A stretch of 63,327 nt of DNA, counting the filler, from Platydemus manokwari (lineage: Eukaryota), in assembly GCA_037951405.1 (NCBI GenBank). It is 6 parts of 6 records of this genome, joined end to end, with 100 filler letters (N's around TTAATTAATTAA, not from the genome) between each part and the next. Parts side by side here need not be neighbours in the genome. Positions count along the whole stretch, not along the records: positions 18,507 to 28,984 come from JBBMOY011130885.1; 5 more parts are not named here. One strand, written 5' to 3'. The position numbers were made by a program, and so were the translations under genes. A model generated the notes under the pieces. The model ran no database searches. It was not told the origin of the DNA and worked only from the letters and a program-made list of their open reading frames with translations. This document shows, one piece after another, positions 20,209-20,808 of the stretch. Numbering within the stretch: position 1 is the stretch's first letter; every line of letters starts with the position of its first letter.

Positions 20209-20808
20209 TGTCAGCCGCTAATATTTTAAAAACCACATATTAAAACCGAACTGAAAAGTCACAACATCAATTATATATTTAAATACGATTATTGAAACAA
20301 ATTAATTTGGATTTTATACAAAATCAAATTTTAAACAAAATTAAATCTTTAATATTTTTTAATTCAATTTCAAATGCTCATATCCACATTTCATTCATAT
20401 CTCTGATTTGCTTTGTTTTCTTAATTGGCATTGTATCAAATGCTCACATATTTATCTGCATAAAAACCTCGGGTTCTTCTATCCGTTTTATTTCTTCTAA
20501 ATATTCTTAATATTCTTTATACATATTCTTTATATCTACTATACATCTTCTCTATATCTTCTTTATATATATAATCTGTATAGCCTCAACATCTTTCTCC
20601 TTCTCTTTTATAGTTTGCAGTCATTGATTTTGTCAGAATCGAATCCTGATGCGTGGTCGCCATGTAATCCGCTACTATTTTAAAAACCACACATTAAAAC
20701 CGAACTGAAAAGTCACGATACCAAATTATATTTAAAATCATTATTTATACAAATTAATGTGATTTTATACAAAAAAATGAGACAAAATTAAATTTTAAAA
20801 ATCTCATA
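20209..20808 (-). mobile_element. Complete non-coding miniature LTR retrotransposon (TRIM-like), 600 bp
   Basis: On the minus strand: 5' LTR 20808-20663 (TATGAG...GTAGCGGATTACA), then PBS TGGCGACCACG (20662-20652), a 280-bp internal region, a purine-rich tract GAATGAAATGTGGA (20396-20383), and 3' LTR 20382-20209 (TATGAG...TAGCGGCTGACA). ACCCT is duplicated at 20204-20208 and 20809-20813. Confidence 0.85.

What the first reader, a model, noticed from the sequence alone, without database searches (positions are those of the whole stretch)
20209..20808. Complete 600-bp non-coding TRIM-like LTR retrotransposon with tRNA-Arg primer site
Seen: two short homologous LTRs (146 and 174 bp) ending in CA; TGGCGACCACG immediately inside the 5' LTR; a purine-rich tract before the 3' LTR (clearer in the 41625 copy: AAGACAAGGGGA); no credible ORF; and a perfect ACCCT duplication on both sides. 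Both LTRs begin TATGAG where the family starts TGTGAG, which fits two LTRs copied from one template. Established: this is the architecture of terminal-repeat retrotransposons in miniature, known from plants and from taeniid tapeworms, where ta-TRIM is expressed in stem cells. Inference: this is a non-autonomous family mobilised in trans by a Gypsy-type partner. I do not recall such a family being described in planarians, but I could not check.
Basis: partly seen in the sequence, partly recalled or inferred. Interest (0 to 1): 0.8.

Follow-up and report, generated by a model that had tools for sequence, protein, structure and literature searches.

The report
Miniature non-coding LTR retroelement copy
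This 600-base stretch is an old, decayed copy of a tiny gene-less retrotransposon from a very abundant repeat family, so it is a real but fairly ordinary piece of "jumping DNA" of a kind already known from plants, ants and tapeworms.

Summary
On the minus strand, 20808..20209 reads: 146-nt repeat, then TGGCGACCACG with no spacer, a 249-nt non-coding purine-rich interior, and a 174-nt repeat. A perfect 5-bp duplication (ACCCT on +) flanks it.

- **Repeats:** they are 85.6% identical (K2P 0.16) and differ by a 21-28-nt indel. Both start TA instead of TG, and the polypurine tract is weak, so the copy is complete in structure but old.
- **Family:** contigs of one public run pile up on exactly 20209-20808 at 100 to 10,000 times the flank level, with sharp edges. 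204 contigs break exactly at the repeat/primer-site border.
- **Shared parts:** the repeat's 3' end, the primer site and about 80-100 nt of leader are far more abundant than the rest of the interior.
- **Second copy:** a degraded partial copy (interior 3' part plus repeat) lies at 25420-25675 (+).

I could not fetch other full copies. So it stays open whether 600-bp units propagate as such (a true TRIM family) or this is a deletion derivative of a larger element. The Gypsy partner, expression and the planarian host are untested. The tRNA-Arg call rests on 11-nt identity with the ERV9 primer site. Verdict: a new member of a known kind, of modest interest.

The parts
20204..20208 (-). Target-site duplication, copy downstream of the element in its own (minus) orientation. 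Reads ACCCT on +, AGGGT on -.
   Evidence: Chance of such a match is 0.0034.
20209..20382 (-). 3' LTR, 174 nt, TATGAGCATTTG...GGCTGACA.
   Evidence: Contig depth rises from about 10-40 in the flank to over 10,000 at 20214-20287.
20383..20396 (-). Weak polypurine tract directly upstream of the 3' LTR (GAATGAAATGTGGA, 11 of 14 purines).
   Evidence: Most other copies read other letters at several of these places (table 3).
20383..20631 (-). Non-coding interior, 249 nt, 69% purine on the element's sense strand.
   Evidence: Depth is 330 or more at every listed place, against 10-20 in the flanks.
20437..20449 (-). Internal near-duplicate of the LTR start (TGTGAGCATTTGA). It is absent from the partial copy at 25420-25675.
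   Evidence: There is a local depth bump at 20438.
20487..20570 (-). Tandem array of 3.9 copies of a 22-nt unit in the middle of the interior. The longest related contigs stop matching near here.
   Evidence: family D6; records 3-7.
20571..20631 (-). Leader downstream of the primer-site block. It is shared with many more copies than the rest of the interior and is a candidate packaging region (inference).
   Evidence: depth is 38,224 in bin 20584-20657, against 1,644 in bin 20436-20509.
20632..20662 (-). Primer-binding site. The core TGGCGACCACG lies at 20662..20652. It is followed by a conserved block that complements a tRNA T-arm-like sequence 2 nt out of register.
   Evidence: 83 contigs lose similarity at 20633 and 204 at 20663 (table 7).
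20663..20808 (-). 5' LTR, 146 nt, TATGAGATTTT...GGATTACA. It is shorter than the 3' LTR by a 21-28-nt indel near its 5' end.
   Evidence: Peak depth is 146,026 in bin 20658-20731, falling to 13.7 just outside.
20809..20813 (-). Target-site duplication, copy upstream of the element in its own orientation (ACCCT on +).
25420..25527 (+). Second, degraded partial copy: homologue of the 3' part of the interior.
   Evidence: Score is 18.5, against null mean 6.7, sd 3.1, max 16.5.
25528..25675 (+). Second, degraded partial copy: LTR-like sequence starting TGTGAGGATTTT. No primer site, 5' LTR or duplication is recognisable.
   Evidence: Local score is 63 against max 42 elsewhere. Collinear score is 50 against null max 35.5.

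Best explanation
An old insertion, on the minus strand, of a miniature non-coding LTR retroelement (TRIM-like). It belongs to a very abundant LTR family of this AT-rich genome.

**Shown:** two direct terminal repeats, a tRNA-type primer site abutting the 5' repeat, a weak polypurine tract before the 3' repeat, no coding capacity, a 5-bp target duplication, and high repetition of every part with edges at the element's ends.

**Inferred life cycle:**
- RNA is transcribed from the 5' LTR.
- It is packaged through its conserved leader into particles made by a coding relative that shares the LTR end, primer site and leader.
- Minus-strand DNA is primed by a host tRNA ending ...CGUGGUCGCCA, probably tRNA-Arg.
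- Plus-strand DNA is primed at the purine tract.
- Integration follows with a 5-bp stagger.

This particular copy is long dead. Its LTRs are 14% diverged, one has an indel, it has a TA rather than TG terminus, and its purine tract is interrupted.

I put about 0.85 on 'two-LTR, non-coding, LTR-retroelement-derived insertion'. I put about 0.6 on the stronger claim that units of this size and layout propagate as a family.
For: - Architecture.
- Primer site: unique in the window with 0 expected. Its first 11 nt are identical to the ERV9 primer site.
- Target duplication: chance 0.0034.
- Purine tract and strand bias: 11 of 14 purines before the 3' LTR, and 69% purine on the interior's sense strand against 49% background.
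- No coding or RNA-gene content: no ORF over 72 aa, no Pfam match, no homologue. No tRNA, 5S or ribozyme.
- Repetition: 7,515 contigs lie on the stretch at 80% likeness or more. Flanks read 2-43. The element reads 1,644-146,026 per bin and 330 or more at every listed place. Edges fall within a few bases of 20209 and 20808.
- LTR border: 204 contigs begin to match exactly at 20663 with unrelated sequence before. This is as expected of 3' or solo LTR ends. 83 contigs lose similarity at 20633, the end of the primer-site block.
- Second partial copy: interior 3' part plus LTR at 25420-25675.
- Shared derived letter: both LTRs carry the same minority letter at position 2, which fits copying from one template.
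Against: - No other full-length copy could be inspected.
- The longest related contigs (records 3-7) match only about 20530-20736 and then diverge.
- The LTR end, primer site and leader are 7-90 times more abundant than the rest of the interior. Most relatives therefore carry a different interior.
- The second copy in the piece would look the same if it came from a larger element.
- The TA start is non-canonical for integrase substrates.
- The purine tract is weak in this copy.
- Summed contig depth is not a copy number, as the tool's own caveat states.
- Complementarity to a canonical tRNA holds for only about 11-13 nt in register.
- Expression is untested.
Confidence: 0.6

Rival explanations
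1. A one-off deletion derivative. A full-length coding LTR retrotransposon (or a large non-coding one) inserted here and later lost almost all of its interior. What remains is both LTRs, the primer site with leader, the region before the purine tract, and the original target duplication.
For::
- LTR end, primer site and leader are far more abundant than the remaining interior.
- Records 3-7 diverge from this copy below about 20530-20556.
- A variable 22-nt tandem array sits exactly there and could mark a deletion scar.

A post-insertion deletion would keep the duplication, so the duplication does not argue against this reading.
Against: - Every listed place in the interior still has 330 or more depth in 14-116 contigs, against 10-20 in the flanks.
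- No pile-up of loose ends inside the interior reaches the printed top of table 7, though 573 rows are hidden.
- Nothing in the interior resembles gag or pol.
Confidence: 0.25
2. Chance neighbours: two independently inserted solo LTRs (or LTR fragments) of the same family that happen to lie 280 nt apart in the same orientation.
For: The family's LTRs are extremely abundant. The two repeats are only 85.6% identical and differ by an indel.
Against: - A perfect 5-bp duplication brackets the pair as a whole.
- The primer site abuts the upstream repeat and a purine-rich tract abuts the downstream one.
- Both repeats share the same minority letter at position 2.
Confidence: 0.04
3. Not an LTR element at all. 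On this reading the abundant ~100-nt core is a tRNA-related SINE or another short repeat, and the apparent primer site is the remnant of its tRNA-like part.
For: The block 20632-20662 (+) resembles the T arm, acceptor 3' strand and CCA of a tRNA. This core is by far the most abundant part.
Against: - There is no tRNA-like 5' half. ARAGORN and Rfam find nothing.
- A genomic ...CCA directly abutting a repeat that ends ...CA on the other strand is the signature of a primer site.
- About a quarter of core copies continue into the primer-site block and the rest end exactly at the LTR border. This pattern is what LTRs predict.
- The element has terminal direct repeats and a 5-bp duplication.
Confidence: 0.03

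Closest known systems
ta-TRIM of taeniid tapeworms (Koziol et al. 2015, PMC4558846)
   Same: Both are non-coding two-LTR elements in a flatworm-type setting. Both have LTRs under 200 bp, a tRNA primer site, a purine tract, short target duplications (4-5 bp), many solo LTRs and a postulated coding partner.
   Different: - ta-TRIM is about 990 bp (198-bp LTRs, about 590-bp interior).
- It uses tRNA-Leu with 9 nt of complementarity placed 4 nt after the LTR, and has TG..CA ends.
- That paper found no sequence similarity to ta-TRIM in Schmidtea mediterranea.
- Here the element is 600 bp, with an Arg-type site of 11 or more nt directly abutting the LTR.
- No expression data exist for this element.
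Plant TRIMs (Witte et al. 2001) and SMARTs, and the ant TRIM (Zhou & Cahan 2012). Cited from my own knowledge, not checked here.
   Same: Size class (under 1 kb), 100-250-bp terminal direct repeats, primer site, purine tract, 5-bp duplication, no ORF, dependence on a partner in trans.
   Different: Plant TRIMs typically use tRNA-Met and show no sequence relation to this element. Cassandra-type TRIMs carry 5S promoters in their LTRs, and none is found here.
ERV9 / tRNA-Arg-primed LTR elements
   Same: The first 11 nt of the primer site (TGGCGACCACG) are identical to the ERV9 site tggcgaccacgaagggac quoted in PMC4724089.
   Different: Beyond 11 nt the sequences differ. ERV9 is a coding vertebrate endogenous retrovirus. 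The resemblance reflects a shared, conserved tRNA 3' end, not relatedness of the elements.

Membership tests
TRIM (terminal-repeat retrotransposon in miniature) | Two terminal direct repeats of roughly 100-250 bp in the same orientation | tested here: met
   146 nt and 174 nt, 85.6% identical.
TRIM (terminal-repeat retrotransposon in miniature) | LTR termini 5'-TG...CA-3' | tested here: inconclusive
   Both LTRs end CA but start TA in this copy. Most other copies read TG at the 3' LTR start (place 20381).
TRIM (terminal-repeat retrotransposon in miniature) | Primer-binding site complementary to a tRNA 3' end, next to the 5' LTR | tested here: inconclusive
   TGGCGACCACG abuts the LTR, is unique in the window and equals the ERV9 site over 11 nt. 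The host's own tRNAs could not be examined.
TRIM (terminal-repeat retrotransposon in miniature) | Polypurine tract next to the 3' LTR | tested here: inconclusive
   11 of 14 purines, interrupted, against a background of 2.8%. Other copies differ at several of these places.
TRIM (terminal-repeat retrotransposon in miniature) | No coding capacity and a total length under about 1 kb | tested here: met
   600 bp. Longest ORF is 72 aa, with no Pfam match or homologue.
TRIM (terminal-repeat retrotransposon in miniature) | Short target-site duplication | tested here: met
   Perfect 5-bp ACCCT, chance 0.0034.
TRIM (terminal-repeat retrotransposon in miniature) | A family of many copies with the same miniature layout (not a single deletion derivative) | tested here: inconclusive
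   All parts are repeated 25 to 10,000 times over flank level, and a partial second copy exists. No other complete copy could be read. The longest contigs diverge inside the interior.
ta-TRIM (taeniid family) | Sequence similarity of LTRs and interior, with a tRNA-Leu primer site 4 nt from the LTR | tested here: not met
   The primer site differs in type and position. The published search found no ta-TRIM-like sequence outside taeniids. No ta-TRIM sequence was aligned here.
Cassandra-type TRIM / retrozyme | 5S rRNA-like promoter or hammerhead ribozyme inside the LTRs | tested here: not met
   An Rfam scan at E up to 10 finds neither in 18507-28984.
tRNA-derived SINE | tRNA-like 5' head with A and B boxes, no terminal direct repeats | tested here: not met
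   No tRNA by ARAGORN or Rfam. Only a 3'-half-like block on the opposite strand. Terminal direct repeats are present.

The most novel reading that the evidence does not exclude
This is one member of a large, previously undescribed TRIM family of a free-living flatworm. On this reading the family shares its LTR end, an unusually long (about 31-nt) tRNA-complementary block and its leader with one of the genome's dominant coding LTR families, which would name the partner that mobilises it. Like ta-TRIM in tapeworm germinative cells, it might be transcribed in stem cells and supply LTR promoters to neighbouring genes.
Probability: 0.2. Interest if true: 0.55.

Novelty: new member of a known kind. 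Interest (0 to 1): 0.3.

Why it matters
If a true TRIM family exists here, it would extend miniature LTR parasites from tapeworms to free-living flatworms. It would also offer a TRIM/partner pair that is easy to trace, because LTR end, primer site and leader are shared. It would give candidate stem-cell or piRNA-target markers to test.

By itself this locus is one dead copy of an abundant repeat. Standard repeat annotation would mask it as 'LTR/unknown', and it has no evident effect on a gene.

Tried and rejected
**Fetching other copies**
- Spurious ORFs: the 72-aa ORF has no homologue.
- Exact look-ups of three window ORFs found nothing on record.
- Exact-pattern scans with the primer-site/LTR junction and the LTR core were all blank. 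They covered JGI metagenome contigs, prokaryote genome contigs and viral contigs.
- Fishing for same-genome contigs through the neighbouring mariner gave one 887-nt ENA metagenome contig. It is only 79% identical and has a different base composition.
- I concluded that this organism is not in the protein collection, so I ran no further search on the 34-aa ORF over the primer site.

**Other blanks**
- Only one sequencing run was offered. It is kept as contigs and is not RNA. Expression, transcript ends and true copy numbers are therefore untestable.
- Literature string searches for the LTR core and the extended primer site found nothing.

**Ideas rejected**
- tRNA gene or SINE head.
- Cassandra or retrozyme.
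- A meaningful U5/primer-site stem: the fold pairs U5 with the primer site, but its energy is not better than shuffles (z -0.59).
- Terminal inverted repeats of a DNA transposon: none beyond TA/CA.

Full report
**What is there**

Read on the minus strand, the stretch is as follows.
- AGGGT, then a 146-nt repeat (20808..20663, TATGAGATTTT...GCGGATTACA).
- TGGCGACCACGCATCAGGATTCGATTCTGAC (20662..20632), then a 249-nt interior.
- A 174-nt repeat (20382..20209, TATGAGCATTTG...GCGGCTGACA), then AGGGT.

The two repeats share 125 of 146 aligned bases (85.6%; 8 transitions, 13 transversions; K2P 0.16). They differ by a 21-28-nt indel close to their 5' ends. A third LTR-like sequence in the piece (see below) has the longer form. 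The 5' LTR has therefore probably lost that segment.

**Is it more than chance?**

- The piece is 75% A+T, so short AT-rich matches are cheap. The informative parts are not AT-rich.
- The 15-mer TGGCGACCACGCATC occurs once in the window with up to three mismatches allowed, against 0.00 expected.
- The flanking pentamer ACCCT occurs four times in 10.5 kb.
- A 5-mer match across a 600-nt spacing occurs at 0.34% of positions in this piece.
- One extra base of microhomology on either side leaves the border ambiguous by one base. Only 20209-20808 gives ...CA at both 3' ends.
- The 14 bases before the 3' LTR hold 11 purines. Only 2.8% of background 14-mers reach that level.
- The whole interior is 69% purine on the element's sense strand, against 49% for the piece.

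**No genes**

- The longest ORF touching the element has 72 codons. It has no Pfam match and no homologue in the word-indexed protein collection.
- ARAGORN finds no tRNA.
- Rfam at E up to 10 finds no tRNA, 5S rRNA or ribozyme in the piece.
- This excludes a SINE head, a Cassandra-type LTR and a retrozyme.

One public run (contigs only, kind unknown, organism coded) holds the locus. Laying its contigs on 19400-21600 at 80% likeness or more placed 7,515 contigs.
- Summed depth is 2-43 in the flanking bins.
- It jumps to 11,221 in bin 20214-20287 and to 146,026 in bin 20658-20731.
- It falls back to 13.7 in bin 20806-20879.

The tool warns that summed contig depth is not a copy number. I use it only as 'very much more than the flanks'. 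Three further details matter.

- *The LTR border.* 204 contigs start matching exactly at 20663 with unrelated sequence before. That is the LTR's ...CA end, as expected for 3' LTRs and solo LTRs. Another 83 contigs lose similarity at 20633, the end of the tRNA-complementary block. The LTR/primer-site border is therefore a family property, not a coincidence of this locus.
- *Uneven abundance.* The LTR's 3' half (146,026) and the primer site plus leader (38,224) far exceed the LTR's 5' half (2,161) and the rest of the interior (1,644-5,793 per bin). Depth is still 330 or more at every listed place. The longest laid contigs (records 3-7) match about 20530-20736 and then run on unlike this copy. 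Most relatives therefore share LTR end, primer site and about 80-100 nt of leader but carry a different interior. That is the pattern expected if a coding family and its non-coding parasites share the cis-acting 5' signals. The same pattern also fits this locus being a deletion derivative.
- *The TATGAG start.* At 20381 nearly all other copies read the letter that makes the LTR start TGTGAG (491.6 of 513 depth, 37 contigs). Both LTRs of this copy start TATGAG. It also means the copy has a non-canonical TA...CA pair of termini.

**A second copy in the same piece**

- A sensitive BLASTN of the element against the piece found a 58-nt match at 25583-25639 on the + strand (E 1.6e-9).
- Alignment shows an LTR-like sequence at 25528-25675. 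It starts TGTGAGGATTTTAAAATGAATT, like the longer 3' LTR, and contains GTTGTGACTTTTCA.
- About 100 nt collinear with the last part of the interior precede it.
- The local score is 63, against at most 42 for other chunks.
- The collinear score for interior plus LTR is 50, against null mean 16.5, sd 6.4, max 35.5.
- The interior part alone scores 18.5, against null max 16.5.
- The copy is badly decayed. It has no recognisable primer site, 5' LTR or target duplication.
- It shows that this interior-LTR junction recurs. A larger element with the same 3' end would give the same picture.
- It lacks the 13-nt internal duplicate of the LTR start (TGTGAGCATTTGA, 20449..20437). That duplicate is therefore a peculiarity of the studied copy or its subfamily.

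**The primer site**

- The first 11 nt equal those of the ERV9 primer site 'tggcgaccacgaagggac' quoted in PMC4724089. There it is labelled Arg after LaMantia et al., but 'W' in the Leipzig tRNA database.
- From my own knowledge, unchecked here, this is the 3' end of vertebrate tRNA-Arg(CCG/TCG).
- Beyond about 13 nt, the block still looks like the complement of a T arm (...TCAGA-ATCGAAT-CCTGA...). It is two bases out of register with a canonical tRNA, and most other copies differ at 20647, within the T-stem-like part.
- I therefore count 11-13 nt as primer site proper and the rest as conserved leader. The host's own tRNAs could not be inspected.
- An RNA fold pairs U5 with the primer site, as in retroviral leaders. 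Its energy is no better than shuffles (z -0.59), so I make nothing of it.

**How it most likely works**

Shown: the parts list above. The rest of this paragraph is inferred. An RNA is made from the 5' LTR and packaged in trans through the shared leader. A tRNA (probably Arg) primes the minus strand and the purine tract primes the plus strand. Integration occurs with a 5-bp stagger.

This copy itself is long inactive. Its LTRs are 14% diverged, one has an indel, it has a TA terminus, and its purine tract is interrupted.

Nothing tested here points to a Gypsy partner rather than Copia or BEL/Pao.

**Comparison with the known**

The closest described system is ta-TRIM of taeniid tapeworms (PMC4558846).
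- ta-TRIM has 198-bp TG..CA LTRs and a 590-bp interior.
- Its primer site has 9 nt of complementarity to tRNA-Leu, placed four bases after the LTR.
- It has a 15-nt purine tract and 4-5-bp duplications.
- It has about 140 full copies and about 1,900 LTR loci.
- A candidate partner, 'lennie', shares the LTR start, primer site and duplication length.
- It is massively expressed in stem cells.

That paper searched Schmidtea mediterranea only for ta-TRIM-like sequences and found none. In the held library I found no paper describing TRIMs in free-living flatworms. Planarian genome papers annotate LTR/Gypsy elements in bulk with automated pipelines and a curated library that I cannot read.

This is therefore a new member of a known kind at most. 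It may already sit unnamed in a repeat library. I could not confirm that the host is a planarian.

**What could not be done**

- No route to other full-length copies worked.
- No RNA run was available.
- It was not needed for the verdict.

**Verdict**

Confidence is about 0.85 that this is a non-coding two-LTR retroelement insertion. It is about 0.6 that it represents a self-propagating TRIM-like family, and about 0.25 that it is a deletion derivative. Interest is 0.3.

Noticed in passing
window 26568-27464 (+): Internally deleted, frameshifted mariner-like DNA transposon of about 900 bp with ~30-nt terminal inverted repeats. ORF fragments match HTH_48 (E 1.4e-9) and Transposase_1 (E 1.1e-8). 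The only relative found is an 887-nt ENA metagenome contig (L001, 79% nucleotide identity, 41% G+C).
   Followed up: partly
window 24426-24857: AT-rich tandem array with a 12-nt period (about 35 units, roughly AATACCAATATT). It is open in both strands as 157-aa and 116-aa ORFs of N/T/I repeats, with no Pfam match. It is probably a minisatellite rather than a gene.
   Followed up: no
window 18580-18710 and 19215-19320: ATT/ATC-rich simple-repeat tracts that pair as imperfect inverted repeats with the 24.4-24.8 kb array and with 28335-28395. This looks like low-complexity similarity only.
   Followed up: no
window 20066-20139: Slightly raised contig depth (42.6, against about 10-20) just outside the element's 3' end. 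It may be a short unrelated repeat or AT-rich cross-matching.
   Followed up: no
window 20690-20731 vs 20632-20662 (minus strand RNA): The U5 end of the LTR (AAUGUGUGGUU...) is imperfectly complementary to the primer site and so resembles the tRNA 3' end with C-to-U changes. The fold energy is not significant.
   Followed up: partly
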